Counted from the stretch's first letter, positions 4,339 to 47,081 are shown. The stretch: DNA of 64,000 nt from IMGVR_UViG_3300017991_000001:1-64000, one strand, 5' to 3'. Numbers and translations are program-made. Notes: generated from the letters alone by a model not told the origin.

Positions 4339-4384
4339 ATCCGCATGTCGTACCGCTACTCTGTTTCTAACCCTACATGTTGGT

Positions 4385-5638: not shown

Positions 5639-5680
5639 CATGTGTCATGCCGTTGTTCTCTTTATGGTCCATATGTTGGT

Positions 5681-6133: not shown

Positions 6134-6166
6134 ATCACCGAATAAATAGCAGTGCGGTATGTGGAG

Positions 6167-6272: not shown

Positions 6273-6316
6273 CCGCATGTCGTGCTGCTGGTTAATCCAT
6301 ACCTCTGTATCTTGGC

Positions 6317-6772: not shown

Positions 6773-6832
6773 CGTCGCTTGATTTCTTTCAGCGGGACCA
6801 TGCAATCGAATTAACAAGCGAACCCGCAAGGG

Positions 6833-30081: not shown

Positions 30082-31158
30082 TTGCCAAAGAAAATCCTGT
30101 TCGCGAGTGACACGCATCTGCACCCCACCATCTGGGACGACCTGCCCCAGGTGTGGGGCGATGCGTACAGAGCGTTCGACCAGCTGTGCCTGCGGGCGGT
30201 GGAGGACGAGGACATCACTTCCGTCTTCCTGGGCGGCGACGTCTTCGACCGCCAGCCGGAGTCCTGCGCGATGGAGTGTTTCCTGCGCAACATGGACCGG
30301 CTGCAGGACGTGAACAAGCCCGTCTTCGCGATCCAGGGCCAGCACGGCAAGGTGCGCACCCGGGGACGCGACGACGTGGTGCCGTGGCCGTCGGTGCACG
30401 GCTGGGTGAAGCAGATGAGCCACAAGCCCTTCGGGTTGCTGCCCAAGGTCAAGGCGGTGGGCATCGATCACTGCGGGCCGGACGACCTGCAGAAGAAGCT
30501 CTCCCGCATCTCGAAGCAGGCCGCGGTGGTCTTCATGCACCAGATGATCAAGGGCGGCGTGCCCCTGATCAAGGACGTGCAGAACTGGGACTTCGATCCC
30601 GAGTGGCTGCCGGAAAGCGTGAAGCTGGTGCTGGCCGGCGACCTGCACGTGCCGGCCGAGTTCAACATCCCCGGCGGCAAGCTGGTCTACAACGGGGCCA
30701 CGGTGCTGCGGAGCATCGACGAGCCCGAGGAGAAGTACTTCACCGTGGTGAGCGAGGAGCTGACCTTCGAGCGGGTGCGCATCAACAGCCGCGTCTTCAA
30801 GCGCGCCTCGGTGTTCGCGGAGAAGGCGCTGCAGCAGGCCATGGAGGCCACGAGCAAGATGCCGCCCGAGTCCGTGTTGGAGGTGAAGTACGACCCGCGC
30901 ATCGACGGGGTGGAGCAGAAGCTGAGGGACGCCAATGAGGCCATCCACTTCCGGTTCGTGCCGGTGCCCACGGTGGGCGTGGTGGTGGGCGAGGGCGAGC
31001 TGGAGCTGCCCGACAACGTGAGTCCCGAAGGGTTCCTGGACGAGTTCGTGGACCGGGAACAGCGTCCCGTGCTGCATTCGTTCCTGTTTCAGATGATCAC
31101 GGCGCAGAACGAACGGGACGAGCTGGAACGTCAACGCATGGAGATCCTCGGGGAATGA
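30082..31158 (+). CDS. SbcD/Mre11-like metallophosphoesterase nuclease
   Basis: SDTHL, GGDVFD, GQHG, FMHQ and GDLH motifs. Confidence 0.9.
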   Translation: MPKKILFASDTHLHPTIWDDLPQVWGDAYRAFDQLCLRAVEDEDITSVFLGGDVFDRQPESCAMECFLRNMDRLQDVNKPVFAIQGQHGKVRTRGRDDVVPWPSVHGWVKQMSHKPFGLLPKVKAVGIDHCGPDDLQKKLSRISKQAAVVFMHQMIKGGVPLIKDVQNWDFDPEWLPESVKLVLAGDLHVPAEFNIPGGKLVYNGATVLRSIDEPEEKYFTVVSEELTFERVRINSRVFKRASVFAEKALQQAMEATSKMPPESVLEVKYDPRIDGVEQKLRDANEAIHFRFVPVPTVGVVVGEGELELPDNVSPEGFLDEFVDREQRPVLHSFLFQMITAQNERDELERQRMEILGE

Positions 31159-33263
31159 TCATTAACCGCGTAACAATGCAAAACTTCTGTCAGCACAAGG
31201 ACAGGAAGGAGGACCTCGGTCCCGGCATGATCGGGATCGTGGGCAAGAACGGCAACGGCAAGAGCAACCTGGTGAGGTCCATGCTGTTCGGCCTCAGCGG
31301 TGATTCGGGCGGGGCCGGCACGAAGGCGGACGACATCACCAACGGCGAGAAGGGCGGCCACGTGCGTGTCGACTTCACGGTGGGGGACGAGAGCGGCTTC
31401 ATCAAGCGCGACCTGAAGACGTCCCGCACGCAGCTGAAGTTCGGGGAGGAGGACCATCGCTCCGCCCGCGAGGCGGACAAGGTCATCTACAACCTGATGC
31501 AGATCAGCCCCAAGCTGTTGCGCGAGGTGGTCTTCGTGGGGCAGGGGCGGATCGAGAGCATGCTGTTCGAGAAGCCTGCCGAGCGGGGCAAGGCCTTCGC
31601 GGCGCTCTTTGGCACCGACCGCATGGAGCGCATCCGGGACCTGCTTCAGCAGGACCTGACGAAGGTGCAGGCCGTCTCCAACGCCGAGGCGATCGAGCTG
31701 GCCCGCAACGAGAAGCAGAGCCTGGAGAAGCAGCTGGCGGATCATCAGAGCACGCTGACGCTGCTGGGACACAAGACGCTCACCCTGGAGGAGGTCAGGC
31801 GGGCGGAGGGCCTGATCGACGTCTACAAGGAGCGCAACCGGGCACAGGCCACGCTGAACGAAGCCGAGCAGCAACTGGCCGGCCTGAAGCGTACGCGCGA
31901 GGAGTTGCAGAAGACTTCCGCGGCCAAGGCGGAGAAGCGCCGCAAGGGCGGCGAGGTGCTGCAGGAACTGCAGGGCGAGTACGACGCGGCCAAGGCGCGC
32001 ATCCAGAACGCGGACAAACTGCAATCGGTGCAAGAGCGGAGGGTCTTCCTGCAGCACGAGATCGACCGCTGCGTGAAGCGTCTCGAGGCGCCGCTGCCCA
32101 AGAAGTGGTCGGAGGAGGACGAAGAGAAGCTCAAGCAGCACAAGGCGGACATCGACAGACTGAACGAGCCGGTGGCCAACGCGCGCAAGGTGGTCGCTTC
32201 ACTGGACCAGGGCGCGGCCACGTGTCCGACCTGCACGCAGCCCGTGCCGCCGGACTTCGTCGAGCAGCAGATGGCCGTCCTGCAGCACGACGGCAACCTT
32301 CTGCAAAACGCCGAGCAGCTCCACGCCGCGCTGAACGACCGGAGGATCGAGCAGGACCAGGCGGTGATGGCCGACACCAGCGAGCGCACGGAGGCGAAGA
32401 TCAAGCTCGACGCCGCGCGCGGTGAGCTGGCGCAGCTGGGCGAGGCGTCGGAGCCGGCATCGTCGGAGACGGACAAGGCGGTGGTGGCCGAGTACGAGGC
32501 GCTGCGGAAGGAGACTTCCGGTCACGAGCTGGAACTGGCCACGACGATGGGACAGCTCAAGCAGCTCGACGACAACATCCGCAACGCCGGGCAGAACGTG
32601 GAAGCCATGCGCAAGGCCCTGTGGCAGATGGACGAGGTTTCCCAGCAGGCCGCCATGGACGCCGACACCAGGTTGAAGGACCACTACGACGCGCAGTTGA
32701 GCGTCTCCGACGTGCAAGGCCAGACCAAGACGTTGGAGGAGCGGCTGCAGTCCACCAGCGAACGGCTGGAGCGCATGGAAGGGGACGAGGCGAAGATCGC
32801 CAAGCGGCTGGAGTGGCGCAAGCTGTGCGAAGAGGCGCGGATGGTGCTGCACCGCAACCACCTGCCCAACCGCGTGGCCCAGGCCTACTTGGGTTCGATC
32901 AACGCCAAGATGAACGAGTATCTGGAGGTGTTCCAGGCCCGGTACACCTGCGCGATCAGGCCGGACTTGAGCGTCAAGTGCCATTTCGGCGAGTACGAGC
33001 TGCCGGCTGAGCGGTTGTCGGGCGGCCAGCGCGTCGAGCTGGGCCTGTCGTTCCGCTTCGCGCTGTACGATCTGTTCGTGGGCCATTTGGGCCTGCTCGT
33101 CATTGACGAGCCCACGGCCTGGCTGGATGATGACCACATCGAGGCGGTGGCGCGGGTGCTGGAGCGCGTGAAGGCGCACTCCAAGTCAAAGGGGATGCAG
33201 GTGATCGTGGTCACCCACGAGCCCAGGCTGATCCCCATCTTCGACAACTTCATACAGGTGTAG
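31155..33263 (+). CDS. SbcC/Rad50-like ABC ATPase
   Basis: GKNGNGKS, zinc hook CPTC, coiled coils, LSGGQ signature, IDEPT. Confidence 0.95.
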   Translation: MIINRVTMQNFCQHKDRKEDLGPGMIGIVGKNGNGKSNLVRSMLFGLSGDSGGAGTKADDITNGEKGGHVRVDFTVGDESGFIKRDLKTSRTQLKFGEEDHRSAREADKVIYNLMQISPKLLREVVFVGQGRIESMLFEKPAERGKAFAALFGTDRMERIRDLLQQDLTKVQAVSNAEAIELARNEKQSLEKQLADHQSTLTLLGHKTLTLEEVRRAEGLIDVYKERNRAQATLNEAEQQLAGLKRTREELQKTSAAKAEKRRKGGEVLQELQGEYDAAKARIQNADKLQSVQERRVFLQHEIDRCVKRLEAPLPKKWSEEDEEKLKQHKADIDRLNEPVANARKVVASLDQGAATCPTCTQPVPPDFVEQQMAVLQHDGNLLQNAEQLHAALNDRRIEQDQAVMADTSERTEAKIKLDAARGELAQLGEASEPASSETDKAVVAEYEALRKETSGHELELATTMGQLKQLDDNIRNAGQNVEAMRKALWQMDEVSQQAAMDADTRLKDHYDAQLSVSDVQGQTKTLEERLQSTSERLERMEGDEAKIAKRLEWRKLCEEARMVLHRNHLPNRVAQAYLGSINAKMNEYLEVFQARYTCAIRPDLSVKCHFGEYELPAERLSGGQRVELGLSFRFALYDLFVGHLGLLVIDEPTAWLDDDHIEAVARVLERVKAHSKSKGMQVIVVTHEPRLIPIFDNFIQV

Positions 33264-34535: not shown

Positions 34536-35116
34536 TCAACTTCGAGCGGTGCTACGACCGTTCGGACGAGGACCTCCAGCGGTTCCTGATCTTCTGCATC
34601 TGCGTTGCCGGCAAGAACGCCAAGACCGTCGACGCGAAGGTGTGCGAGTTTCTGGAGCCGTGCGAACACCGCAGGGAGACACCCTTCGAGTTCCTGCGGT
34701 ACCTGGTCAACATCGAGCGCTTGGACTTCGCGCTCGCGAAGGTCAAGATGGGGAAGTACAGGCTGCTCGAGCGGTCGTTTACGTACCTGGTCGAGAAAGA
34801 GTTGGACCTCCGGTCTTGTACGGTCGATCAGCTGGAAATGGTGCCCGGCATCGGTCCCAAGACCGCGAGGTTCTTTCTGCTGTACACGCGGGAGTACTTC
34901 CGGGGGGCGGTACTCGACACGCACGTGCTCCAGCACCTGGTGGCTTGCGGATGCAAGAAGGTGCCGAAGCAGACACCGCAGGACCCGAAGGTGTACCGGA
35001 AGTGGGAGGCGGTCGTGCTGGAGCTGGCCGCGGCCAACGGAATGGACCCGGCCGAGTACGACAACGAGATCTGGAAGAGCCGGAGCCCCTCAGCGGAGTT
35101 GGGGGTGTCTCCGTAG
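34532..35116 (+). CDS. HhH-GPD DNA glycosylase-like protein (OGG-like)
   Basis: LEMVPGIGPKTARFFL HhH motif with catalytic Lys; AVLDTHVL. Confidence 0.85.
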   Translation: MINFERCYDRSDEDLQRFLIFCICVAGKNAKTVDAKVCEFLEPCEHRRETPFEFLRYLVNIERLDFALAKVKMGKYRLLERSFTYLVEKELDLRSCTVDQLEMVPGIGPKTARFFLLYTREYFRGAVLDTHVLQHLVACGCKKVPKQTPQDPKVYRKWEAVVLELAAANGMDPAEYDNEIWKSRSPSAELGVSP

Positions 35117-35179
35117 CTCAACAGGCAGAGCGACGCTCTCTAAAAGCGGTGGTTCCGGGTTCGAGTCCCGGCGGAGGCA
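35107..35179 (+). tRNA. Amber suppressor tRNA (anticodon CUA), CCA not encoded
   Basis: Acceptor GTCTCCG/CGGAGGC plus A73; D-arm GCTC/GAGC; anticodon loop CTCTAAA; T-arm CCGGG-TTCGAGT-CCCGG. Confidence 0.9.
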
Positions 35180-35308
35180 TTTATCGTCGATTATTGGTGT
35201 AGTCAGTGCGGAAAGCCGATTTACAGCGGCAGTCGATTAGTCTGTGATGATTGCAAAGATGCCAGGTACTTCGGGGATAAAACTCCGCAGGGGGAAGATC
35301 TCCAAACC

Positions 35309-35971
35309 ATGAAAGGAAGGGGCGACGTGAGCGATCCATTACCCTACGTTCGCATTGGCGACGAGAAGACGAGGAACGGGGTGGAAGTGACCGTGTTGGA
35401 GGCGAACGTGGGGGGCCTGTTCGCGCTCAAGCAGATCATCGACGAACACATTCGCCGCCGTAGCAAACTCAAGCAGGACGGGCACGACCCCGCGAAAATG
35501 CCCGTTCGGTACGCCACACCGATCGTCTCCAGGGGCGCTCGCGGCGCGCGGACGTTCGAGCTGGTGCTGGACAACGACGGCGATTTCCCGAAAGAGGAGG
35601 AAGCACGCGTGGTGGATCAGGAGAAGTTGACAGCCGAAGACGGCGTCGTGAAAGCGAACGCGGTGACGACGGGCAGGACGGATTGCAGCAGCGAGAACGA
35701 GGCCAACAAGCCCAAGACGCTGGTTCCTTTTGCCAGTCTGCCGATAGGCGGACAGCGCGAGGAGATGCACCGGAAAGTGGACAACTGGTTCATGCATCAC
35801 CCGCCCAAGAATGACCAGGAAGCACGCTACCAGAAGCTGCGCTGCAAGTTCCGGGCGCTGGCGCACGATATCGTCGATATGACGCCGCCGTGTGCCGACC
35901 AGACCGTCGCGCTCAGGAAGCTGCAGGCGGCCAACATGGCGGTCAACGTAACGATCGCCTGCAACGAATAA
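35309..35971 (+). CDS. Protein with a C-terminal Acb2/Tad1-like helical hairpin (nucleotide-signal sponge candidate)
   Basis: C-terminal NWFMHHPP..Q..RY..LR..F..LA..I..TP..DQTVALRKLQAANMAVNVTIACNE pattern. Confidence 0.6.
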   Translation: MKGRGDVSDPLPYVRIGDEKTRNGVEVTVLEANVGGLFALKQIIDEHIRRRSKLKQDGHDPAKMPVRYATPIVSRGARGARTFELVLDNDGDFPKEEEARVVDQEKLTAEDGVVKANAVTTGRTDCSSENEANKPKTLVPFASLPIGGQREEMHRKVDNWFMHHPPKNDQEARYQKLRCKFRALAHDIVDMTPPCADQTVALRKLQAANMAVNVTIACNE

Positions 35972-36568: not shown

Positions 36569-36570
36569 GC

Positions 36571-36826
36571 AGCCGGGGTGCCGCCGCGGGGGATCGTGGC
36601 CGCGGGAGGGGGAAGCGCCTACATGGGGCCTCCTCGGGCGTAAGGCCAGGACTTGTCAGACTGCAGACCGGATCGGCCGTACGGTCTGCACGAGATGGAG
36701 TCACCGCCGAAAGGGTTTCGCTCCAATGCGCAGGCGCTTAGGACCAACAGGCCCGAACGAGTCACTTAGCGTAAGTGCGGAGGTTTGGGTCGCCCACGAG
36801 TCGGGTCGGAAACCGACCCCCCGGTT
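36571..36826 (+). ncRNA. ~255-nt multibranch structured RNA
   Basis: Terminal AGCCGGGG/CCCCGGTT; AAGCGCCT/AGGCGCTT; TGCAGACCG/CGGTCTGCA; CACTTA/TAAGTG; GGGTCGG-AAA-CCGACCC. Confidence 0.6.
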
Positions 36827-36839
36827 TTAGGAGAGACCC

Positions 36840-37462
36840 ATGGCGAACATCGACTGGAAGCAGATCTGGGACTGGGCCGATGACACGGGCAAGGATGTCT
36901 TGAAGATCATCAAGCCCTACCTGCCGGCACTGGCCAAGCAGGGGCCCGAGATCTGGGAAGGCTTTATCAAGCACCTCAACGATAAGGACTTCACCAAGAT
37001 CGACCAGATGATGTACCAGAAGATGTCGCCTGACGAACGCGCCGAGCTCGAAGCACAGGTTTACGAGGGTGGCTACCAGGCGGCCATGGCGCGCTTCAAG
37101 CGCAAGGAACTGTACAAGGAGGTGGCGCAGAAGATTCTGCTGCGCATCCTGCTGAAACTCGCGACGGGAGGTTTGGGATGAAAACGGTCAAGCTTACGGA
37201 CGCCACGCACGGCACGCCGGTCCTTATCAACCAGGAACTCTTCGGCCACGCCGTGGTGGACCCATCTCCCAACCGGGACCCGGCCGCGCCTCCGCCGACC
37301 CTGATCCGCACCAAGACGGGCGGAACGTTCAAGGTCAGGGAAAACATCGATGACGTGGAACTTCGGTTCAACGCGCCTCCGGGCGTGGTTACGCTGAACG
37401 TGCCTGCCAACGCGGAGGCTCCTCCGGGCGGCAGCGAGGGTGTTGTCGGTCCGGGTGCGTAA
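36840..37462 (+). CDS. Two hypothetical ORFs (36840-37181, 37178-37462)
   Basis: RBS-led, overlapping ORFs. Confidence 0.7.
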
Positions 37463-37464: not shown

Positions 37465-37983
37465 ATGGAAGTGGTCGCAACGATACGGTTCACGACGCCC
37501 TGCCTCGGAAACATCCGCGGTGACGGGCCGAACCGGATGCTCCGAAACGCCGAGGGCAAGGTCATTCTTCTGCAGACCTGGTGGCGCTCGGGCTTGGGGT
37601 TTGCCGCCCAGGCACTGTGCCGATACCAGAAAGAGGTATCCGAGGTCCAGACCGACCCTGTCGTCGATGGCGAGCTGAGCGTTTACCGGCGGTATTGGGC
37701 ACCTGACAAGTACACGGAGCACGAGGCGTTCGACGCCGGCAGCGAGCTCCGGGTGCGTTTCATGCTGCCCCGCAAGATGGACGTGAAAGGATTCCAGGAG
37801 CTGCTCGAGATGTCGGGACGATACGTGGGAATATCGCCGCATGGTTATCGACAGGACTTCGGGCGTTTTTCCGTGGTGAGCGTGGATGTAACCAAAGCGA
37901 GGAGAGCGAGAGCGCGTGGCAGAAGAAAGGAACAACAAGGCCCTGATACGGAGGTGCGGATTCCACATCCAGGTCATCCCTGA
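37465..37983 (+). CDS. Solo minimal RAMP (Cas7-like fold) protein
   Basis: beta1 IRFTTPCLG, GKVILLQTWWRSGL helix, HEAFDAGSELRVRF, Gly-rich loop LLEMSGRYVGISPHGYRQDFGRFSV. Confidence 0.65.
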   Translation: MEVVATIRFTTPCLGNIRGDGPNRMLRNAEGKVILLQTWWRSGLGFAAQALCRYQKEVSEVQTDPVVDGELSVYRRYWAPDKYTEHEAFDAGSELRVRFMLPRKMDVKGFQELLEMSGRYVGISPHGYRQDFGRFSVVSVDVTKARRARARGRRKEQQGPDTEVRIPHPGHP

Positions 37984-39376
37984 CTATGCGATGTACCTGG
38001 CGGGGCCTTTGACATACAAGCGCAGGATCGTGAAGGGTGCTTCGTCAAAGAACGCGGAGTACCGCACGATCGAGTGCTTCAAGCTGCACACGGGGAGCAT
38101 GCTGGTGCCCGCGGGTCTGACCCAGCGGGTGGTCAAGGTGCTCCGCTCCAGCGGCCTTGAAGTTTCGTTCCAGGACCTGAGGTCACAGGTGCTCCCGGAG
38201 CCGGTCCTGGACACCCTGCCCCCGCTCAGGCCGGGGCAGGACGAGCTGCTGGCCAGCATCGTCGCTTCGGACCACGGCGTCATCGAGGGCCCCACCGGTA
38301 GCGGCAAAAGCTGGATCATCCGCCAGATATGCAGGATGTGGCCGACGGCCAACGTCATCATCTGCATTCCCGCCGCCGTGGGCGGGTCGCTGTTGGAGCA
38401 AACGTACAAGGACCTGTTGGAGGACCTTCCCGAAGACAAGGTCGGGATGGTTGGTCTGGCGCGTTGCGACAACAAGCAGGTCACGTGCGTGATGGACCGC
38501 TCGCTGCACAGAGCCAACCTGGAGCAGTGTCAGATATTCATATTTGACGAGGTCCATCACGCCGCGGCCCCGAAGACCGCCGAAGCGCTGGGCAAGGTTT
38601 GGGAGGCCAGGAGGTTTGGCTTCTCCGCTTCTCCCGTGGGGCGCAGCGACCTGGCCGACCTCGAGACCGAGGCCATGTTCGGCCCGGTGATCCACCGCAG
38701 CACCTACCAGGACATCCAGAAGACGGGCGCGATCGTGCCCATAGAGGTGCTGGTCTTCTCCATGTGCATGGCGCGCAAGACGGTGGCCAGCACCGACACG
38801 GCCAGGGAGCGCCACGGCATTTGGCGCAACCAGGACCGCAACGGCCTGATCGCGGCGGCCATCCAGTGGGTGCGCAGGACGTACGGGGTGGACATGCAGA
38901 TCCTGATCTCCGTGAAGACCGTGGAGCACGCCGTCTACCTCAACGCCCACCTGCCCGACTTCACCCTCGTCTACGGCGACATGCAGCCCAAGAAGCGCGA
39001 GCGCTGGGAGCGTGCGGGCTTGCTCATACCGGGCGAACACCCCATCACATCGGGGGAGCGGGCGACCCTGCAGGATGACTTTCGCGACGGCAAACTGAAG
39101 CGCGCCATCGCCACCCAGATATGGGGCACGGGCGTGGATTTCCCGGGCCTGGAAGTGCTTGTGCGCGCGGACGCGCAGTCCTCTTCCATACGCAATACGC
39201 AGCTTCCCGGAAGGGTGACAAGAAAGGCCGAGGGCAAGGATTTCGGGCTGGTCATCGACTTCGATGACTGCCATAATGAAGCGCTTCAGCGCCGTGCGCG
39301 GAAGCGTCTTTCCATCTACAGGAAGAAGGGATGGAAAATCACCCACGTAGATCTGATGAACCAGACAGCGCCTTGA
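37916..39376 (+). CDS. SF2 DEAD/DEAH helicase (UvsW-like)
   Basis: LRPGQ, GPTGSGKS, DEVHH, SAS, TGVDFP, QLPGRVTR. Confidence 0.92.
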   Translation: MAEERNNKALIRRCGFHIQVIPDYAMYLAGPLTYKRRIVKGASSKNAEYRTIECFKLHTGSMLVPAGLTQRVVKVLRSSGLEVSFQDLRSQVLPEPVLDTLPPLRPGQDELLASIVASDHGVIEGPTGSGKSWIIRQICRMWPTANVIICIPAAVGGSLLEQTYKDLLEDLPEDKVGMVGLARCDNKQVTCVMDRSLHRANLEQCQIFIFDEVHHAAAPKTAEALGKVWEARRFGFSASPVGRSDLADLETEAMFGPVIHRSTYQDIQKTGAIVPIEVLVFSMCMARKTVASTDTARERHGIWRNQDRNGLIAAAIQWVRRTYGVDMQILISVKTVEHAVYLNAHLPDFTLVYGDMQPKKRERWERAGLLIPGEHPITSGERATLQDDFRDGKLKRAIATQIWGTGVDFPGLEVLVRADAQSSSIRNTQLPGRVTRKAEGKDFGLVIDFDDCHNEALQRRARKRLSIYRKKGWKITHVDLMNQTAP

Positions 39377-39960
39377 TCGAGCAGCAGCTCGAGCATGTGC
39401 AGCGGGCCTACTTATGGCTGCGGCAGAAGATCAAGCCCAACATCAGGCGTGTCTCCGGCAACGAGACCGACTGGTACCGGCTGGCCGAGGCCCTGGCCCG
39501 GCAGCGATTAGACCCCTATGGCTACGTGCAGTTCTGCTACGACATGTTCGTCACCAAGTTCGACGACCTGTACCCCCACCTGGTCACGGACTTGAAGAAC
39601 GTGTATCGGTTCGCGTCGTCGTCCAACCGGACGGGCAGCGCGGACAGGCTGCGGGTGATCCTGCGGCTGCAGTTCCTCGAGCTGGAGCATCAGCTCGGGC
39701 GTGGCAGGGAACTGCCTGACGTGCTCATGGATGAGGACGTGTCCATGAGCGCCCTGTTCAGGTACGCGGTGTGCAAGCTCTTCGGACTGCGGCGCCTGGC
39801 CGTCGTGTTCGAGGAGGAGGCGCAGCGCATGCTTACATTCAAACCAGCTTACCGCGCCCTGTTGCGCGGGCTCTTGGAGGGGCACCATGGCTCAGGAGGG
39901 CAACCCGCACCGGATCACAAGGCATCAGTTGGACTTGCTTCTGGCACACCTCATACGTGA
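39331..39960 (+). CDS. Hypothetical protein in the replication module
   Basis: ORF between the two helicases; start uncertain. Confidence 0.6.
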   Translation: MENHPRRSDEPDSALIEQQLEHVQRAYLWLRQKIKPNIRRVSGNETDWYRLAEALARQRLDPYGYVQFCYDMFVTKFDDLYPHLVTDLKNVYRFASSSNRTGSADRLRVILRLQFLELEHQLGRGRELPDVLMDEDVSMSALFRYAVCKLFGLRRLAVVFEEEAQRMLTFKPAYRALLRGLLEGHHGSGGQPAPDHKASVGLASGTPHT

Positions 39961-41392
39961 ACCGCGTGTGCTGCTGCAGGGAAAGCAGCGCCTGCGTGAC
40001 GAGGACTTCGACGACGACTACGAACGGAGTCACCGGATCATCTGGCAGGTGACGCGCGCCTACCACGAGCGCCACAAGGAAATGATCCAGTGCGGACAGC
40101 TGTACGCCGAACTCGAGAAGCGCATGCTCGGCATGCCCGAGTTCGAGGACGTGCAGGTGCAGCAGGCGGTGTACAACCTGGCGCACGCGTGTTTCAAGAC
40201 CAAGGGTCTGATGCCGGAGCACGCGATCGAGATCCTGCAGGACTTCCTCAAGCAGCGGCGCGTGCGCACGCACCTGATGGAGGCCGCGGAGCGCGAGCGC
40301 CGTGACATGGACAAGGTGGTGGACGAGCTGGTGGACCGCCGGCGCGAGGCCACCATCACCATTGCCGAGCCGATCCAGCCGTTCAAGAAGGGCAACGCCT
40401 TCTTTGGCGTGCCCGAGCGCAAGCCGATCGGGGTGATGTTCGTCGACGCGCTGTTGGGGGGAGGGCCTCGCGCGGGTGAGGCCTACGGCTTTCTGGCGCC
40501 CACCGGGGGCGGCAAGACGACGCTCGTCAACCAGATGGGCACCGAGGCAGCACGCCGCAAGAACGTCTTCGTCATCTTCCACTACGAGCAGCGCCTGCAG
40601 GGCACGAAGGACGATCCGCACAATGAGTTCTGGATGGGCCCGTACGCCTACGCGCTGGGCATGACCAAGGAGCGGGTGGAGCAGATCCGCGACCCGAGGG
40701 ACTTCACGCCGGAGGAGATGGCGAAATACGAGAAGGTGACCGAGGAGATCGGCGACTACCTCTACTTCTACGACTTCTCGGGGGCCCGTGACACGGCCGG
40801 CGAGGGCGGCGTGGCGGAGGTGGATTCCTATCTGCTGGACCTGAAGAGCAGGGGCATCAAGGTGGCGGGCTTCGCCATCGACTGGTTCTGGCTGATGATG
40901 ATGCGCTCCATGCATCTGCACGAGTCGCAGCGGGATAACGCCGAGCGGCGTTACGCCCAGCAGCTGCTGGACCAGATCAAGAAGGTGGGCGAACGCCACG
41001 GCTGCTGGTGCTGGATCAACCACCAGTTGCAGGCGGCCAAGGGCGCCCAGTCACGCCAGCCCGTGAAGTGGAACGAGGCGGCCGAACTGAAGAGCTTCGC
41101 CTGGACGCTGGACTGTTGTTTCGGCCTCAACGGTTTCGACCACAAGGGCCGCGCGCGGCTGGAGATCTCCAAGGGCCGCAACCAGAAGTTGATGGGCGCG
41201 ACCGTGCAGTTGGACGGCGCCCGTGCCACGTTCAAGGGCCTTGAGGGCGATTGGGGGTGGGACGGAAGGAAGAAGGAATATACGCTCAAGGGCCAGGAAA
41301 ACGCGGTGCCTGTGGAACAACTGGGCGGCCCTGTCGCGAGGCAAGTTGAAAACTACTCGGGCGAAGGTGACATGCCCGTGGTTGACACCTAA
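39887..41392 (+). CDS. DnaB-like replicative helicase
   Basis: APTGGGKT Walker A, HYEQ, AIDW, NHQL, SKGRN; upstream of primase. Confidence 0.85.
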   Translation: MAQEGNPHRITRHQLDLLLAHLIREPRVLLQGKQRLRDEDFDDDYERSHRIIWQVTRAYHERHKEMIQCGQLYAELEKRMLGMPEFEDVQVQQAVYNLAHACFKTKGLMPEHAIEILQDFLKQRRVRTHLMEAAERERRDMDKVVDELVDRRREATITIAEPIQPFKKGNAFFGVPERKPIGVMFVDALLGGGPRAGEAYGFLAPTGGGKTTLVNQMGTEAARRKNVFVIFHYEQRLQGTKDDPHNEFWMGPYAYALGMTKERVEQIRDPRDFTPEEMAKYEKVTEEIGDYLYFYDFSGARDTAGEGGVAEVDSYLLDLKSRGIKVAGFAIDWFWLMMMRSMHLHESQRDNAERRYAQQLLDQIKKVGERHGCWCWINHQLQAAKGAQSRQPVKWNEAAELKSFAWTLDCCFGLNGFDHKGRARLEISKGRNQKLMGATVQLDGARATFKGLEGDWGWDGRKKEYTLKGQENAVPVEQLGGPVARQVENYSGEGDMPVVDT

Positions 41393-42451
41393 ATGCTGAA
41401 TCCACGACTTTTCAAGTCGTTGGCCGATCGCTTCGGGAAGGTGAGGATCGCCAACGAAGGGGAGCGCATGCTCGTCAAGGAGGTGCCCGACGCCAAGCGT
41501 GAGGGCAGGACGCGCGAGATCCCCGAGACGTCCGGTGAGTACTACCGGGTCAACTGCCCCTACTGTCAGGACACCAAGGGTCGGCTGTGGATCAACCACC
41601 GCTGGAACACAAAGACGGCCGACGGCCGTCCGTGGGGCTGGTGGCTGGCGGTGTGCTACAACGAGAACTGCAACCTGAGCAGGCTGCGGGACGAGCTGGA
41701 GCTGTACCTGGTGGACAAGCCCACGATCAAGCGGGCCCACAAGGAGGCGTTCCAGAAGACGGTGCGGTTCAAGGAGGTGGCGTTGCCGGGGCGGTGCGTG
41801 CCGGTCTCGGGGCTGGAACCGGGACATCCGGCGAGGGCCTACCTCGCCAGGCGCAACTTCGACCCCTACGAGCTGGTGAAGCTTTTTGCCGTCCATTATT
41901 GCGTGGACGTGCCGGAGGACCCCGACGGGTTCGTGCCCGACACCAAGTGGCACGCGCGCATGGTGCGGGGGCGGCTGGTCATACCCATCTACCGGCTGGG
42001 CAAGCTGGTGGGCTGGCAGACCCGGGCCATCGACGACGAGTCGCATCCGAAGTACTACACGATGCCGGGCCTGAAGAAGCAGCACCTCATCTACAACGGC
42101 GACATGTGCCGCACCTACGACTTCGGCGTGGTGGTCGAGGGCGCCACCGACGTGTGGCGCGTGGGACCGCGCGGCGGCGGGGTGCTGGGCAAGGAGATCA
42201 GCTACTACCAGCGCCAGCTCATCTCGGCGTACTGGGGGGACGGGGCCATGTGCCTGCTGTTGGACCCCGAGGCGCTCGAGGACATCGACAAGGTCAACAA
42301 GATGATCAACCTCCGCGACGGCTTCAAGTGGGGCGCGTTCGCGTTGAGGCTCGCGCCGGGCCAGGACCCCGGCGGTATGGATCGATCCGATTTGTGGAGA
42401 CTCATATCAAGCTATGCTCGCACCAGGGGCATCCAACTCCTCTCTGTGTGA
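41393..42451 (+). CDS. DNA primase
   Basis: CPYC...CYNENC Zn finger, GRLVIPI, GWQTR, TOPRIM VVEGATD, DPG. Confidence 0.88.
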   Translation: MLNPRLFKSLADRFGKVRIANEGERMLVKEVPDAKREGRTREIPETSGEYYRVNCPYCQDTKGRLWINHRWNTKTADGRPWGWWLAVCYNENCNLSRLRDELELYLVDKPTIKRAHKEAFQKTVRFKEVALPGRCVPVSGLEPGHPARAYLARRNFDPYELVKLFAVHYCVDVPEDPDGFVPDTKWHARMVRGRLVIPIYRLGKLVGWQTRAIDDESHPKYYTMPGLKKQHLIYNGDMCRTYDFGVVVEGATDVWRVGPRGGGVLGKEISYYQRQLISAYWGDGAMCLLLDPEALEDIDKVNKMINLRDGFKWGAFALRLAPGQDPGGMDRSDLWRLISSYARTRGIQLLSV

Positions 42452-45400
42452 TCTGGACCACGTGGCGCTTGACCGGTTTCCGCTGACGGAGACCTACGAG
42501 CGCGCGAAGACGGAGTGGGGCTGTTTGAAAGAGGAGGAGGTGGCACGCACGCTCTTGTGGGGCGGCGGGATGGCGTCGTGGCTCTCCGTGGCCGACGGCA
42601 AGGACCGCGTCTCGCCGGTGCGCTGGGTGACGGGCACCCACATCGGCAACGGCACGCCGGGGCCCTATCCCCATTACGACGTGATGGTGGTGGGCAAGAT
42701 GCCCGGCGCCGAGGAGATCATGAAGGGCCGGGTGCTGTGCGGCAAGTCGGGGCAGCTGTTGTTGAAGGCCGCCATGGCGCGGGGCTGCCACTACCTGATC
42801 AGCAACGCCTACGGCACCAACGTGTGCCGCTTCGCGCCGCCCGACGGGAGCAGCAACCTCAAGCCCGCCCATGTCAAGGACTGCATGCCCATGCTCGCCC
42901 AGGAGCTGGCGATCAACAATCCCAAGTACGTGTTGCTATTGGGTACCGACGCGGTGAAGGCCTTCTTCGGCAACAAGTTCAACCTGTCGAAGGTGCGCAG
43001 CCACTGTTTCGTGCTGCCCACCCCGTACGCGCTGGGCGAGGAGCCGACCGACGCCGACATCCTGACCAACGAGGCCTACGACGCCGGCGTCAAGATCTAC
43101 GCCACCATCCACCCCGCGGCCGTGCTGCGCGAGATCGGGTTGCAGGCGGGCCTGGAGCGGGACCTGGAGCGGTTCGCCGGCCTGGTGTCCGGCGCGTTCC
43201 GCGGCAACAGCACCATCCAGCAGGACACGTACTACCACTACGTCCACCAGCACGCGCCCCTGAAGCACATCATCGACCAGATCCTCGCCGCCGGCATACG
43301 CGAGATCGCGGTCGACTGCGAGTGGGGCGGCACCTTCCCCACGGGTTCCCTGCGCACCATCCAGTTCTGCTGGGCGCCGAGGGAGGTGTGCGTCGTGATC
43401 CTGCGGCGCCAGCACATGCACGACGCCCAGCAACCGGGCGAGCGGGCGAAGATGATGATGGAGCTCAAGCGGCTCTTCCACCATCCCGGTATGAAGATCG
43501 TGGGCCACAACATCCGCGCTGACGCCAAGTGGCTGGCGCTGGAGGACCTGCCGATCATGGATCGGGTCAGCTTCGATACGATGCTGGCCGACCACATCCT
43601 GAACGAGAACGCCGAGCACGGGTTGGAGGAGTGCGCGGTCCGCATGACGGACATGGGCCGGTACGACCTGCCGCTGAAGAAGTGGCTCTCGGCCAACCCG
43701 CAGCCCAAGCACGCCGGCTTCGCCGAGGTGCCGGACGACATCCTGCACCCCTACTGCGCCTGCGACCCCGACGCGACCTTCCGGCTGATCGAGCCGCTGC
43801 GCAAGCGCCTGGCCCAGCCCGACCTGTCGAGGGTGCGCCACTGCTACGAGAAGATCGTGCTGCCTTGCATGCAGCCCGTGCACGAGATCGAGATGAACGG
43901 GTTGGCCGTGGACCAGGACCGCATGGAGGGCCTGGTATGGACCTACGACACCAAGAAGCGCGAGCTGATCGATCACCTGCGCGACCTCATCGGCGACCCG
44001 TACTTCAACTTCCGCTCCTACCCCCAAGTCTCCCGCCTGCTGTTCGGTAAGATCCACGAGGGTGGGCTGGAGCTGGTCCCGTTGAAGACCACGGAGAAGC
44101 CGGCCCGCATGTGGGACGACGTGCGCCACGTGCCGGAGCACGAGCTGGAGCGCCTCAACCCGTCCACGGACTCCGAGACGCTGAAGCATCTTGCCGCCGA
44201 GTACCCGGACGTGCCCATCGTCACGGCGCTGGCGGACCTGCGGCTGGTGGACCAGGTGTCCAAGAGTTTCATGCGGACGCCCGAGGTCGATCCCTACACG
44301 GGCGACGAGATCTACGAGTCGGGCCTGGTCGGCCACGTCGACCCGGACGGGCGCGTGCGGACATCCATCAATCAGATGTCCGAGACGGGCAGGTGGAAGA
44401 GTTCAGACCCCAACCTACAGAATCTTCCGAACCGGCAGGACGCCGAGCTGAAGCGGGTGATGGGGGAGGGTGTCCACAAGATACGCAGTTGCTTCATCGC
44501 CGACGAGACGGTGGAGGCCGTCGAGCGGTTGGAGCAGGGCTGGGTGCTGGTGGAGGCCGACTTCTCGTCCGCCGAAATCTTCACGCTCGGTTACCTGTCC
44601 GACTGCCCGAAGCTGTTGATGGACGCGAAGAGCGACCTGCACGGTCGCGGCGCGGTGAACTACTTCGGGGCGCCCAGGTGGGACGGGTTCGAGCAGGGCA
44701 TCAAGCCCCCGGAGGAGTGGTTGAAGGAGCACAAGCACCTTAGGGTGGGCGCCAAGTCGGTGAACTTCGGCATCCCCTATCAGCGTGGCGCCAAGGCCGT
44801 GGCGCGCGAGGTCACCAAGGCCACCAACGGCAAGGTGTCCTGCGACACGATGCAGGCGCAGGGGTACATCAACGGGTTCTACGAGACGTACCCCGAAGTC
44901 GACAACTTCGTGGAGATGGCGAAGGCTTCCGTGATCTTCCCGGGCTATCTGGACCAGCCCTTCGGCAGACGCAGGCGCTTCTCCTCCTTCGCGGACGATT
45001 CCGCCATCGCGGCACAGCAGCGCGAGGCGGTGAACTTCCCCATTCAGAGCACGGTGGCGGACCTGCTCAACACCGCCGTCTACAACCTCTGGATGTGGCG
45101 CAACGCCTACCCGGGCGAGGCCGAGTACCGGATCGTGCTGTGCATCCATGACTCGGTCTTCCTGGAAGTGCGCGGGCCGCACGTGCCCGTGGTCGTCGAC
45201 ACCATACTCCCGGCCTGCATGCGGCACGGGGCCGTGGCTCCCATGTGGAAGCCCGAGTGTTACAAGCTGTCGAACCGTGGAAAACCGAAACGTGGAGAAC
45301 CGTTTTACACGAAACCGACGCGACCATTCTCGTTGGACATCGACGTGGAGTTGATGACGAGATGGGGATCGGAACCGGACCCGGACGAGCTGGTGCGCAG

Positions 45401-45452
45401 GGGCGTGCCGGTGAACTGGGTCGAGGCAAACGTGAAGAAAGGTGCACAGTAA
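42414..45452 (+). CDS. Family A DNA polymerase with N-terminal UDG-like and 3'-5' exonuclease domains
   Basis: UDG4-like MVVGKMPG..G.SG / TIHPAAVLR; exonuclease VDCE, GHNIRAD, YCACD; polymerase TGRWKSSDPNLQN, ADFSSAE, KSVNFGIPY, NFPIQS, IHDS. Start uncertain. Confidence 0.95.
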   Translation: MLAPGASNSSLCDLDHVALDRFPLTETYERAKTEWGCLKEEEVARTLLWGGGMASWLSVADGKDRVSPVRWVTGTHIGNGTPGPYPHYDVMVVGKMPGAEEIMKGRVLCGKSGQLLLKAAMARGCHYLISNAYGTNVCRFAPPDGSSNLKPAHVKDCMPMLAQELAINNPKYVLLLGTDAVKAFFGNKFNLSKVRSHCFVLPTPYALGEEPTDADILTNEAYDAGVKIYATIHPAAVLREIGLQAGLERDLERFAGLVSGAFRGNSTIQQDTYYHYVHQHAPLKHIIDQILAAGIREIAVDCEWGGTFPTGSLRTIQFCWAPREVCVVILRRQHMHDAQQPGERAKMMMELKRLFHHPGMKIVGHNIRADAKWLALEDLPIMDRVSFDTMLADHILNENAEHGLEECAVRMTDMGRYDLPLKKWLSANPQPKHAGFAEVPDDILHPYCACDPDATFRLIEPLRKRLAQPDLSRVRHCYEKIVLPCMQPVHEIEMNGLAVDQDRMEGLVWTYDTKKRELIDHLRDLIGDPYFNFRSYPQVSRLLFGKIHEGGLELVPLKTTEKPARMWDDVRHVPEHELERLNPSTDSETLKHLAAEYPDVPIVTALADLRLVDQVSKSFMRTPEVDPYTGDEIYESGLVGHVDPDGRVRTSINQMSETGRWKSSDPNLQNLPNRQDAELKRVMGEGVHKIRSCFIADETVEAVERLEQGWVLVEADFSSAEIFTLGYLSDCPKLLMDAKSDLHGRGAVNYFGAPRWDGFEQGIKPPEEWLKEHKHLRVGAKSVNFGIPYQRGAKAVAREVTKATNGKVSCDTMQAQGYINGFYETYPEVDNFVEMAKASVIFPGYLDQPFGRRRRFSSFADDSAIAAQQREAVNFPIQSTVADLLNTAVYNLWMWRNAYPGEAEYRIVLCIHDSVFLEVRGPHVPVVVDTILPACMRHGAVAPMWKPECYKLSNRGKPKRGEPFYTKPTRPFSLDIDVELMTRWGSEPDPDELVRRGVPVNWVEANVKKGAQ

Positions 45453-47081
45453 ATGGGTTACAACGACGAAGTGCCGTCCGGCCAGGGGCTGGATGGTCTG
45501 CCCGGCTTTTTCATCAAGAAGTCAGGCGCCCCGCACACGACGCAGTTCCTGAACTTCGGCAATCCGACCGTCTTCAGGATACTGCCGGAGATCAACGTCA
45601 ACGGGCATGAGGTGCCCTGGCGGCTGGGTCCGGGGCAGGGCGAGTTCTCGAACTGGATCAAGGGTTTGAGGGTCGCCACCAAGATGGGGGTGAACGGCAA
45701 GTTCACCTGCATCGCCAACGTGAAGGGCAAGCCCCCTCGGGAGCTTGGCCCCATCGACGTCTTTGCCAATGCCGTACACAAGGCCGTCGAGCGCAACAAG
45801 CGCGCCTTCCCGGAGGAGTGGGAGGACTGGGTGACGTATCTCCCCAAAACCGGCATCAAGCTGGGCATCCCGGACTATCACGCCGGCGTGCAGGGCCTCC
45901 TGTTCGAGCACGGAGGCAAGCAGTTCATGGACGAGAAGGGTAATCCGCAGCCCAGGCACCCGGTCATCCTGTTGATGAAGACCAGTGCCCGGTTCAAGCT
46001 GCAGGACATGTGCAACGTGGAGGTGCCGGGCTACTCGGGCGCCCCCGAGGATTACAACCGGCGCTATCCGATCGGGGACGCCTTCTCCCTCGGGGGTGGC
46101 CACCTGCTCAAGATCTTCCCGGTGCCGGACGACGGCTCCACGCGGGCCCACTACGACATCGAGGTGTTGCAGGAGGTGGTGCCCATTCCGAAGTCGGTGT
46201 CCATGGAATGGCGTCCTTGGGACGAGATCCTGGACTACCTGGACGAGGCCCAGCAGGTTAACCTCGTCGTCAACCACTTCCCGCCGGAGGTGGTGGACTT
46301 CGCGCTCAGCCAGGGACAGTACGGACATCTCGTGCCGCCCCACGTGAAGGGCGCGTTCGAGCAGATGCGTTTGCGGATGCAGGGTGGCGGCGGCGTGGCC
46401 GTGCAGCCGTACGGCACGCAGGGGTATCAGCAACCTCAGCAGCCCCAGCAGCCCCAGCAGCCCCAGCAGCCGCAGGGGCAGATCCAGGCGGCTCCGGTAC
46501 CCGCCGAGGTACCCGCCGTGGACTCCCCCGAGTTGAGGCAGAGCGTGGGCACGCAGGCAACTCAGCCGGCTGCCACGCCTCCCGCCACCGGACCCATCGT
46601 CAACTTCGGGGAGCAGAACTATACGCAGCCCTCGCCCACGGCGAGTCCTGCGCAGCCCGCCCAGCCCGCCCAGCCGGCGCAGCCCGCACAACCCGTGCAG
46701 CCTGCCCAACCGGCGCAACCGGCGCAGCCCGCTCAGCCCACCCAACCGGTCAGGGCTGTAAACTTCGGTGGTGCGGAGGCACAGACTCCGATGCCGGCAC
46801 CGGAATCTCAGGCCACTACGGCTGCACCACCGCCTCCGCAGCCGCCCAACGACCCGGACGTGCCGCCGCCTCCACAGGTGGCGCCCGCGCCCAACGCCGC
46901 ACCCGCGGCGGCAGCAGCCACGCCTGAGCAGTTCAACCAGCCTGTGGCCGGGGGTCAGGCTCCGCAGCAACCCATCGGCGATCCCGCGCAGACGCAGAAC
47001 GCGCAGGCCGATACGCTCGCCCGTCTCCGGGCGGCGCGTGAGCAGGTCGACGGACAGGCTCCGCAGCAACCGCAGCAGTAG
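45453..47081 (+). CDS. Probable ssDNA-binding/replication protein with a long Gln/Pro-rich tail
   Basis: Lies between polymerase and RecA; FRILP motif typical of phage SSBs; ~230-aa low-complexity tail. Confidence 0.5.
   Translation: MGYNDEVPSGQGLDGLPGFFIKKSGAPHTTQFLNFGNPTVFRILPEINVNGHEVPWRLGPGQGEFSNWIKGLRVATKMGVNGKFTCIANVKGKPPRELGPIDVFANAVHKAVERNKRAFPEEWEDWVTYLPKTGIKLGIPDYHAGVQGLLFEHGGKQFMDEKGNPQPRHPVILLMKTSARFKLQDMCNVEVPGYSGAPEDYNRRYPIGDAFSLGGGHLLKIFPVPDDGSTRAHYDIEVLQEVVPIPKSVSMEWRPWDEILDYLDEAQQVNLVVNHFPPEVVDFALSQGQYGHLVPPHVKGAFEQMRLRMQGGGGVAVQPYGTQGYQQPQQPQQPQQPQQPQGQIQAAPVPAEVPAVDSPELRQSVGTQATQPAATPPATGPIVNFGEQNYTQPSPTASPAQPAQPAQPAQPAQPVQPAQPAQPAQPAQPTQPVRAVNFGGAEAQTPMPAPESQATTAAPPPPQPPNDPDVPPPPQVAPAPNAAPAAAAATPEQFNQPVAGGQAPQQPIGDPAQTQNAQADTLARLRAAREQVDGQAPQQPQQ
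46428..46748 (+). repeat. Coding 9-bp tandem repeats (QQP and AQP units)
   Basis: CAGCAGCCC-type units at ~46428-46475 and GCNCARCCN-type units at ~46650-46748. Confidence 0.85.

What the first reader, a model, noticed from the sequence alone, without database searches (positions are those of the whole stretch)
37465..37983. Solo minimal RAMP/Cas7-like gene embedded in the DNA replication module
All four RAMP hallmarks appear in order within ~140 aa: TP-x2-G strand, helix 1, E-x3-G strand, and the terminal Gly-rich loop ending FGRF. The gene has no cas neighbours and overlaps an SF2 helicase. It could form RNA-guided filaments with a non-CRISPR RNA, act as an anti-CRISPR Cas7 mimic, or process the I-E-like arrays 31 kb away. 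It is potentially a second RNA-guided system in this window.
Basis: partly seen in the sequence, partly recalled or inferred. Interest (0 to 1): 0.75.

Follow-up and report, generated by a model that had tools for sequence, protein, structure and literature searches.

The report
Guide-less Vipr-like RAMP beside phage helicase
A 211-kb uncultured phage encodes a very small protein with the fold of the CRISPR "RAMP/Cas7" RNA-binding subunits; its closest known relatives are the recently described phage "Vipr" proteins, but it has none of their guide RNAs and is instead a highly conserved gene sitting between the DNA-end nuclease SbcCD and a helicase in the phage's replication genes.

The parts
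37465..37983 (+). Minimal RAMP gene (172 aa). The conserved core is residues 1-145 (37465-37899); the variable tail overlaps the helicase gene.
   Evidence: ORF. Family of 27 close homologues and 335 clusters. AF2 model with pLDDT 88 and order beta-alpha-beta-beta-beta-alpha-beta. RAMP matches in PDB, AFDB and Atlas. A Vipr profile searched over the whole genome hits only 37774-37878.
37916..39376 (+). XPB/RAD25-like SF2 helicase (486 aa), translationally coupled to the RAMP gene.
   Evidence: ResIII + Helicase_C, phrog_16 'DNA helicase' at 2.6e-46. Best solved relatives are archaeal XPB/RAD25. It lies directly downstream of the RAMP in every locus that extends past the RAMP gene. The start is fixed by the conserved N-terminus.
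36840..37181 (+). Conserved 113-aa all-helical protein that precedes the RAMP in most relatives; role unknown.
   Evidence: Homologue just upstream of the RAMP in about 20 loci; absent in L008-L010 and L049. Alignment A5. Helical model with pLDDT 74 and no significant fold match.
37178..37462 (+). 94-aa ORF between the helical protein and the RAMP. It is specific to this genome and not part of the conserved unit.
   Evidence: No homologue in any related locus. No family hit.
30082..31158 (+). SbcD/Mre11-like nuclease subunit, the conserved upstream neighbour of the unit.
   Evidence: phrog_100. Metallophos gene before SbcC in L056. Homologues in relatives.
31155..33263 (+). SbcC/Rad50-like ATPase, the conserved upstream neighbour. 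In some relatives it lies directly before the RAMP.
   Evidence: phrog_77 at 4.1e-51. Found upstream of the RAMP in almost every locus with enough flank, including the distant members L033, L055 and L056.
39331..39960 (+). Conserved 209-aa protein between the helicase and the DnaB-like helicase (context; possibly a loader).
   Evidence: Homologue at the same position in all loci long enough to show it. No family hit.
39887..45452 (+). DnaB-like helicase (39887-41392), DnaG-like primase (41393-42451) and UDG-fused family A DNA polymerase (42414-45452): the replisome genes downstream (context).
   Evidence: phrog_19, phrog_47, phrog_17. Pfam families in relatives. Synteny.

Best explanation
The gene encodes a stripped-down RAMP: one RRM domain with the Gly-rich loop, about 145 aa, basic. 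It belongs to the same deep lineage as the phage Vipr proteins but is not a canonical VIPR effector. I propose that it binds single-stranded or branched nucleic acid through helix 1 and the G-loop, as all RAMPs do, without a pentanucleotide-repeat guide. I propose that it works as the co-expressed partner of the XPB-like SF2 helicase encoded immediately downstream, within the SbcCD-linked recombination/replication machinery of this clade of large phages. For example, it could hold the displaced strand, an RNA primer or an R-loop while the helicase remodels the junction.

Shown: the gene is real and conserved, it has the RAMP fold, it is specifically similar to Vipr, vrRNA repeats are absent, it is independent of CRISPR arrays, the SbcCD-RAMP-helicase order is invariant with start/stop coupling, and it is very strongly conserved.

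Inferred: nucleic-acid binding, partnership with the helicase, and the role in replication or recombination.
For: Fold:
- AF2 model, pLDDT 88.
- All top 50 Foldseek PDB hits are Cas7-type RAMPs, E down to 2e-6.
- Atlas TM 0.73 to a PF03787 cluster.

Vipr link:
- AFDB ranks 1, 3, 4, 5 and 7 are X1U2U4, A0A1F4YLN4, A0A2D6XG06, A0A661D0E2 and A0A0F9A1L0. These are the five founding Vipr hits named in bioRxiv 10.64898/2026.04.26.720920.
- HHalign of the family against the SUSP1-type Vipr alignment gives 93.5%, E 2.2e-7. Against single SUSP1 Vipr it gives 77.7%. Against single Csm3, Cmr4 or Cmr6 it gives 0.1-0.2%.
- The Vipr HMM hits only this ORF in the whole genome.

Not guide-programmed like VIPR:
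- YNNGG, NNNGG, YNNNG and period-5 G scans and TRF find nothing above shuffles in G000, G001 and G002 or in 29 loci.
- The same scans recover all four SUSP1 vrRNAs.
- SUSP1 contacts H17, D177 and R179 align to a variable residue, an invariant Pro and a Gly.

Core-gene behaviour:
- The RAMP lies directly before the helicase in every locus that extends past the RAMP gene, including members at 24-30% identity, with SbcC upstream.
- The RAMP stop and the helicase start overlap, abut, or lie at most about 90 nt apart.
- RAMP identity to the window is about 29-67% (44-67% in the closer loci), generally at or above that of the helicase (about 29-55%; 36-55% in the closer loci), primase (36-50%), DnaB-like (27-37%) and SbcC (26-51%, mostly about 29-36%).
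- Core pI median is 9.4, net charge +5.
- The family is almost exclusively viral and absent from 185,579 species genomes.
Against: - No direct evidence of nucleic-acid binding or of contact with the helicase exists. The complex prediction gave no answer.
- All loci come from one broad phage clade, so conserved order may partly reflect descent rather than function.
- All characterised Vipr relatives are RNA-guided, and the VIPR preprint says some types carry helicase accessory genes. A guide that is short, degenerate, non-periodic or supplied in trans would escape my scans.
- The near-invariant H86-E87-R76 cluster could be catalytic rather than a binding site.
- The sequence similarity to Vipr covers only 42 columns, the generic RAMP G-loop region.
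Confidence: 0.42

Rival explanations
1. It is a bona fide VIPR system of a helicase-accessory type. The RAMP polymerises on a phage-encoded guide RNA that does not have the canonical YNNGG periodicity, or is too degenerate to see. It finds a DNA target, and the downstream SF2 helicase is its Vap effector.
For: - The closest structural and sequence relatives are Vipr proteins.
- Layout is the same: RAMP first, accessory gene overlapping downstream, as for vipr-vap1 in SUSP1.
- The preprint states that types III-V carry nucleases or helicases and that some loci have only NNNNG-type repeats found by a language model.
Against: - No period-5 signal above chance in three genomes and 29 loci, with a working positive control.
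- The nearest intergenic region (36569-36839) is neither conserved nor unusually structured, z = -0.4.
- The gaps upstream of the RAMP share no element.
- GGY-contact residues are not kept, and the helical bundle that pockets the skipped target base is absent.
- The gene is fixed in the replisome cluster and evolves slowly, unlike a conflict system.
Confidence: 0.25
2. It is a RAMP ribonuclease of the Cas6/Cas5d kind. It uses the near-invariant His86/Glu87 (with Arg76) to cut RNA, for instance primers, R-loop RNA or a phage transcript, in support of replication.
For: - H86 and E87 are 98% conserved and R76 95% across 111 diverse members.
- From prior knowledge, not tested here: several RAMPs (Cas6, Cas5d, Csm3, Cmr4) are metal-independent or Asp-dependent RNases, and XPB-type helicases pair with a nuclease (Bax1) in archaea.
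Against: - The geometry of the putative site could not be inspected.
- No RNA substrate was identified.
Confidence: 0.13
3. It is an anti-CRISPR decoy: a Cas7 mimic that enters host type I/III/IV effector complexes or soaks up crRNA.
For: It has a Cas7-like fold in a lytic-type phage with no cas genes. The same window carries other counter-defence genes, for example an Acb2/Tad1-hairpin protein.
Against: - It has a fixed position inside the core replication/recombination cluster and the highest conservation of the module across phages that share only about 30% identity in SbcC and DnaB.
- It lacks the elaborations (fingers, second interfaces) that Cas7 subunits use to polymerise with Cas5, Cas8 or Cas11.
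- It is closer to Vipr than to CRISPR RAMPs.
Confidence: 0.05
4. It serves the phage's own cas-less CRISPR arrays (4385-6775), as a Cas6-like processor or Cas7-like backbone.
For: The two occur in the same genome.
Against: - G002 (complete, 201 kb) and G001 (180 of 185 kb scanned) carry the RAMP but no CRISPR-like array or the window's repeat.
- The gene lies 31 kb from the arrays in a different module.
- A single 145-aa RAMP cannot replace a Cascade.
Confidence: 0.03

Closest known systems
Vipr, the RAMP of VIPR systems (Escherichia phage SUSP1 type; bioRxiv 10.64898/2026.04.26.720920 and 10.64898/2026.04.26.720927)
   Same: Both are phage-encoded, stand-alone, single-RRM RAMPs with a G-loop ending ..FGRFSV. 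Both have no cas genes and an accessory gene overlapping downstream. Vipr proteins are the best AFDB structural matches and the only family with a significant profile match.
   Different: - About 145 aa against about 190 aa, with no alpha-helical bundle.
- No YNNGG/GGY-NN vrRNA anywhere in the genome.
- GGY-contact residues are replaced: D177 by an invariant Pro and R179 by Gly.
- It sits in a fixed place in the SbcCD-helicase-replisome cluster, not in a small accessory locus flanked by long intergenic DNA.
- The family is absent from GenBank phages and from the species-representative genome collection searched, and its one NCBI member carries no nr label. It therefore probably falls outside the 667 systems catalogued from NR.
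Cas7-type CRISPR RAMPs (Csm3, Cmr4, type VII Cas7, Csf2, Cas7-11 domains)
   Different: There is no sequence-level signal: PF03787 does not hit, and HHalign gives 0.1-0.2%. There are no cas partners and no link to arrays. The protein is much smaller and lacks the insertions.
Type IV-A CRISPR (Csf2 Cas7 + DinG helicase) and Cascade-Cas3
   Same: All combine a RAMP with an SF2 helicase. Csf2 chains are among the structural matches.
   Different: The helicase here is XPB/RAD25-like, not DinG or Cas3. There is no Cas5, Cas6, Cas8 or crRNA. The context is replication and recombination.
Archaeal XPB-Bax1 and phage T4 UvsW / gp46-gp47 modules
   Same: An SF2 DNA-remodelling helicase is encoded beside a small partner and next to an Mre11/Rad50-type nuclease in a replication/recombination cluster that also holds DnaB-like, primase, polymerase and UvsX-like genes. 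The comparison with T4 and with Bax1 rests on my own knowledge.
   Different: The partner here is a RAMP. As far as I know, that fold has not been described in those modules.

Membership tests
RAMP superfamily (fold level) | Ferredoxin/RRM-like beta-alpha-beta-beta-alpha-beta core | tested here: met
   AF2 model with pLDDT 88: strand 2-9, helix 37-51, strands 72-79/82-89/94-100, helix 107-120, strand 135-144. RAMPs are the top matches in PDB, AFDB, VIA and Atlas.
RAMP superfamily (fold level) | Glycine-rich loop between helix 2 and the last strand | tested here: met
   G118, G122, G127 and G133 followed by R-F; G122 and G133 are invariant in 111 members. HHalign aligns it to the Vipr G-loop.
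RAMP superfamily (fold level) | Sequence match to Pfam RAMPs (PF03787) or another Cas RAMP model | tested here: not met
   No hit for the protein, for 111 family members at E<=10, or for the six-frame genome.
VIPR system / Vipr | Vipr-type RAMP protein (structural and sequence kinship to the founding members) | tested here: met
   The five founding AFDB entries are ranks 1, 3, 4, 5 and 7. HHalign 93.5% to the SUSP1-type alignment, but over 42 columns only. The Vipr HMM hits only this ORF in the genome, E 0.005.
VIPR system / Vipr | vrRNA genes: tandem pentanucleotide (YNNGG or related) repeats, 9-16 units, near the vipr gene | tested here: not met
   None above shuffled controls in G000, G002 (both complete), G001 or 29 loci. 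TRF finds no period-5 repeat. The positive control, SUSP1, gives all 4 vrRNAs. Language-model (Evo2-type) detection was not available.
VIPR system / Vipr | Residues that hold the GGY motif (SUSP1 H17, D177, W178, R179, R138) | tested here: not met
   In the HHalign alignment, D177 aligns to invariant P125, R179 to G127, and W178 to Y/H126 (aromatic kept). By my own manual N-terminal alignment (no tool), H17 aligns to variable N16. R138 could not be placed.
VIPR system / Vipr | Alpha-helical bundle that, with the thumb, pockets the skipped target base | tested here: not met
   The model has only the two RRM helices. Residues 10-36 form a short loop or hairpin (the feature is described).
VIPR system / Vipr | Compact vipr-vap operon | tested here: inconclusive
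   The RAMP and the downstream helicase are coupled in every locus that extends past the RAMP gene, and the preprint mentions helicase vaps. But the pair is part of a long replisome operon, and the preprint's type tables are not available.
CRISPR-Cas effector subunit (Cas7/Cas5/Cas6) | Encoded with other cas genes | tested here: not met
   No cas hit among neighbours or array-flanking ORFs. No PF03787 hit in the genome.
CRISPR-Cas effector subunit (Cas7/Cas5/Cas6) | Co-occurrence with a CRISPR array | tested here: not met
   Relatives G001 and G002 carry the gene and no array.
Cas6-like endoribonuclease | Catalytic His-containing site and a cognate RNA hairpin substrate | tested here: inconclusive
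Anti-CRISPR protein | Accessory, patchily distributed, fast-evolving gene outside core modules | tested here: not met
   Fixed position and the highest conservation in the module.

The most novel reading that the evidence does not exclude
This family is a guide-independent RAMP that is a core component of phage DNA recombination/replication, working with an XPB-like helicase next to SbcCD. As the smallest RAMP known (RRM + G-loop only), it may represent a state older than both Vipr and CRISPR RAMPs. On that reading, the RNA-guided effectors of VIPR and class 1 CRISPR would descend from a viral replication accessory protein.
Probability: 0.18. Interest if true: 0.88.

Novelty: new variant of a known kind. 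Interest (0 to 1): 0.64.

Why it matters
RAMPs have so far been known in CRISPR-Cas and, since 2026, in VIPR. In both they polymerise on a guide RNA. This report describes a large, almost purely viral RAMP family (335 clusters at 50% identity). It has no Pfam, PHROG, NCBIfam or PADLOC model and no member in cultured phages. It lacks any recognisable guide and behaves as a core replication/recombination gene.

If it is guide-less, it widens what the RAMP fold is used for and bears on the current proposal that CRISPR effectors descend from phage proteins. If it does carry a cryptic guide, it is a new VIPR type with a helicase effector and a new RNA code. Either outcome can be tested directly with a 145-aa protein and a 3.4-kb locus.

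Tried and rejected
- **Family libraries.** Pfam, PHROGs, NCBIfam and PADLOC scans of the protein gave nothing. Pfam at E<=10 on 111 members gave only scattered chance hits.
- **Profile against PDB sequences.** Only bS6 at E 0.07, not significant.
- **GenBank phages (tblastn).** No member of the family.
- **GTDB species genomes.** No member.
- **BFVD.** Only three other viral RAMP-like models; the family itself is not there.
- **Tie to the CRISPR arrays.** Rejected because array-less relatives keep the gene.
- **vrRNA search.** Strict and degenerate period-5 scans and TRF were all negative, with a positive control. The few period-5 runs found (for example G002 5797-5886) lack any GGY pattern and match chance counts.
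- **Conserved ncRNA near the gene.** Intergenic 36569-36839 is not conserved and not unusually structured. The gaps upstream of the RAMP share only hairpins and promoter-like boxes. Rfam finds only a tRNA.
- **RAMP-helicase complex prediction.** No answer, so it is not evidence either way.
- **Upstream 113-aa helical protein as a Cas11-like small subunit.** No significant fold match.
- **Frameshift or readthrough fusion of RAMP and helicase.** Frames and stop codons differ between loci, and no fused proteins appear among the 150 listed profile hits.
- **Helicase homologues in cultured phages (Bacillus phage G, Twort-like).** No RAMP-sized upstream gene.
- **RAMP as the missing SSB.** PF00436 and PF10991 are absent from three genomes. 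But other SSB families and the 542-aa Q/P-rich protein were not excluded, so this stays a side idea.
- **RNA-seq evidence.** Only DNA metagenome runs hold the locus, so no reads were laid.

Full report
**What is there.** The window is the first 64 kb of a 211,084-bp virus record with direct terminal repeats, rated complete. Its G+C content is 62.7%. It recurs in several sediment and seawater DNA metagenomes from 2018 and 2021. ORF 37465-37983 (+) encodes 172 aa.

It has no Pfam, PHROG, NCBIfam or PADLOC match. It is still a real, conserved gene. A word-indexed search finds 27 homologues at 48-75% identity. A profile search of 1.84 billion representatives finds 335 clusters at E<=1e-3, of which 194 are at E<=1e-10. 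Almost all are stand-alone proteins of 140-200 aa. ESM-Atlas clusters of the family are 94-100% viral. Conservation ends near residue 145; the tail varies in length and sequence and overlaps the next gene.

**Fold.** With the 27-sequence alignment, AlphaFold2 gives a confident model (pLDDT 88, pTM 0.77). The order of elements is:
- strand 2-9
- an irregular segment, 10-36
- helix 37-51
- strands 72-79, 82-89 and 94-100
- helix 107-120
- a 14-residue loop
- strand 135-144

This is an RRM-type core with the Gly-rich loop exactly where RAMPs have it. The structural searches agree:
- All 50 listed Foldseek matches in the PDB are Cas7-type RAMPs: type VII Cas7, Csm3, Cmr4, Cas7-11 domains and Csf2. 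E-values go down to 2e-6 and TM is about 0.5.
- The Atlas structure search gives TM 0.73 to a bacterial cluster in which 98% of members carry PF03787.

**Closest known relatives.** The top AlphaFold-DB cluster hits are X1U2U4 (rank 1, E 8e-8), A0A1F4YLN4 (rank 3), A0A2D6XG06 (rank 4), A0A661D0E2 (rank 5) and A0A0F9A1L0 (rank 7). A literature search found bioRxiv 10.64898/2026.04.26.720920. Its methods name exactly these five entries as the founding hits of the VIPR family.

The preprints describe VIPR systems as follows:
- They are mostly phage-encoded.
- Each consists of a minimal RAMP (Vipr, about 20 kDa), usually one accessory gene (vap), and vrRNAs made of 9-16 YNNGG repeats plus a structured tail. 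The vap encodes a DNA binder, a nuclease or a helicase.
- Vipr polymerises one protomer per repeat, hides each GGY, and presents the NN dinucleotides to read dsDNA with a one-nucleotide skip.

I fetched phage SUSP1 (KT454805; identity checked from the record's description). I located its two-gene locus flanked by repeats and built an alignment of 43 SUSP1-type Viprs. Profile-profile comparison with 111 members of the focal family gives 93.5% probability and E 2.2e-7 over 42 columns, covering helix 2, the G-loop and the last strand. A single SUSP1 Vipr sequence gives 77.7%. The same test against single Thermus thermophilus Csm3, Cmr4 and Cmr6 sequences, taken from plasmid pTT27, gives 0.1-0.2%. 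In the other direction, the Vipr HMM searched through all six frames of the 211-kb genome hits one place only, 37774-37878, inside the focal ORF (E 0.005).

So the family is closer to Vipr than to CRISPR RAMPs. The detectable similarity is limited to the most generic RAMP element.

**Why it is not a canonical VIPR.**

First, no guide was found. A strict (YNNGG)>=4 scan, degenerate 10-unit scans for NNNGG, YNNGG and YNNNG, a base-periodicity scan for NNNNG, and Tandem Repeats Finder all gave nothing beyond shuffled controls. They were run on the complete genome G000, on a complete 201-kb relative (G002), on 180 of the 185 kb of another relative (G001), and on 29 loci of family members totalling about 250 kb. 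The same scans recover all four SUSP1 vrRNAs, one upstream and three downstream, as published. The few period-5 runs seen show no GGY pattern.

Second, no other conserved RNA candidate appears:
- The nearest sizeable intergenic region (36569-36839) has no counterpart in relatives and folds no better than shuffles, z = -0.4.
- The gaps upstream of the gene in relatives share only hairpins and promoter-like boxes.
- Rfam finds only a tRNA.

Third, the SUSP1 residues that grip GGY are not kept. D177, which is essential, aligns to an invariant proline, and R179 aligns to a glycine. By my own manual alignment of the N-termini, H17 aligns to a variable position. Only the aromatic W178 position is retained (contacts).

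Fourth, the alpha-helical bundle that forms the pocket for the skipped target base is absent from the 145-aa core.

**Genomic behaviour.** In every locus that extends past the RAMP gene, the gene is followed at once by the same SF2 helicase. The two genes overlap by up to 95 nt, abut, or lie at most about 90 nt apart. SbcC, usually with SbcD, lies upstream. This holds for members at only 24-30% identity, where the genes further downstream differ (L034, L055, L056).

The helicase carries ResIII + Helicase_C and matches phrog_16. Its best solved relatives are archaeal XPB/RAD25. Further downstream come a conserved 209-aa protein, a DnaB-like helicase, a primase, a UDG-fused family A polymerase, a 542-aa Q/P-rich protein and a UvsX-like recombinase.

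| Protein | Identity between the window and relatives |
|---|---|
| RAMP | 44-67% in the closer loci (29-37% in L033 and L034) |
| SF2 helicase | 36-55% in the closer loci (29% in L034) |
| Primase | 36-50% |
| DnaB-like helicase | 27-37% |
| SbcC | 26-51%, mostly about 29-36% |

The RAMP is thus generally the most constrained protein of the module. Its core is basic, with median pI 9.4. No member occurs in 185,579 species-representative prokaryotic genomes or in GenBank phages. The family therefore belongs to uncultured, apparently non-integrating phages.

**The window's CRISPR-like arrays.** Three arrays with 29-nt repeats and 32-nt spacers lie at 4385-6775. Each follows a repeated leader-like block, and no cas gene flanks them. 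Relatives G001 and G002 keep the RAMP but have no array and no copy of the repeat. The RAMP is therefore not an accessory of the arrays.

**Interpretation.** The secure statements are:
1. The gene is real.
2. It encodes a minimal RAMP.
3. Its nearest known kin are Vipr proteins.
4. It lacks the guide, the guide-reading residues and the bundle that define VIPR.
5. It is locked to an XPB-like helicase and SbcCD inside a core replication/recombination cluster and evolves slowly.

From these I infer that it most likely acts as a nucleic-acid-binding partner of the helicase in recombination-dependent replication or end processing, and not as a programmable weapon (confidence about 0.4). The main rival is a VIPR variant with a cryptic guide and the helicase as effector (0.25). 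That rival is plausible because all characterised relatives are guided and the preprint reports helicase-type accessory genes. A third possibility is a Cas6-like RNase built on the near-invariant His86/Glu87/Arg76 (0.13).

The one attempt to test RAMP-helicase contact in silico returned no answer and is not used as evidence. The conserved upstream 113-aa helical protein gave no informative fold match.

**Novelty.** The kind, a phage-encoded stand-alone RAMP, has been known since the 2026 VIPR preprints. This family appears to be an undescribed branch with different anatomy and context, so I rate it a new variant of a known kind. If it is guide-less, it would be the first RAMP assigned to replication or recombination, and a candidate for a pre-Vipr state of the fold.

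Noticed in passing
window 4219-6775: Three CRISPR-like arrays with 29-nt repeats and 32-nt spacers (period 61). They lie at about 4385-5430 (about 18 repeats), 5681-6090 and 6310-6775 (diverged repeat). Each is preceded by a repeated leader-like block of about 120 nt (4219-4343, 5523-5638, 6148-6271). No cas genes flank them, and no RAMP Pfam hit occurs in the whole phage genome. This looks like a phage carrying cas-less arrays that would need host Cas proteins.
   Followed up: partly
window 35106-35180 (+): A tRNA with anticodon CTA, which reads the amber codon UAG. ARAGORN calls it tRNA-Pyl and Rfam scores it 61 bits as a tRNA. It is a suppressor-type tRNA inside the replication region and may indicate stop-codon reassignment in part of the genome.
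   Followed up: no
window 35309-35971 (+): A 220-aa protein whose C-terminus matches the Acb2/Tad1 hairpin domain (PF24729, E 3.7e-6, 27.5 bits against a cut-off of 27; also phrog_1454). It is a candidate cyclic-nucleotide sponge against CBASS or Thoeris.
   Followed up: no
window 6859-8480 (-): Two adjacent genes with sulfotransferase domains (PF00685, PF13469), right next to the arrays.
   Followed up: no
window 45453-47081 (+): A 542-aa ORF with Q/P-rich 9-nt coding repeats (46428-46749), between the polymerase and the UvsX-like recombinase. It has no PHROG hit. No PF00436 or PF10991 SSB was found in this phage or two relatives, so this ORF might be the single-strand binding protein.
   Followed up: partly
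G000 124.96-125.31 kb and 207.2-209.85 kb (outside the window): Long coding repeats with 9-, 18- and 27-nt periods (GGCGTGACC...), typical of collagen-like Gly-X-Y proteins, probably fibres. My first crude array finder picked them up, and they are not CRISPR arrays.
   Followed up: partly
window 36840-37181 (+): A conserved 113-aa all-helical protein with a hydrophobic C-terminus that usually sits just upstream of the RAMP in relatives. The model has pLDDT 74 and no significant structural match.
   Followed up: yes
L008:7837-8003, L009, L010, L056:4885-5003: In several relatives a strong G/C hairpin follows SbcC, and a TTGACA-like box precedes the RAMP. This suggests that the RAMP is the first gene of the helicase/replisome transcription unit.
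   Followed up: no
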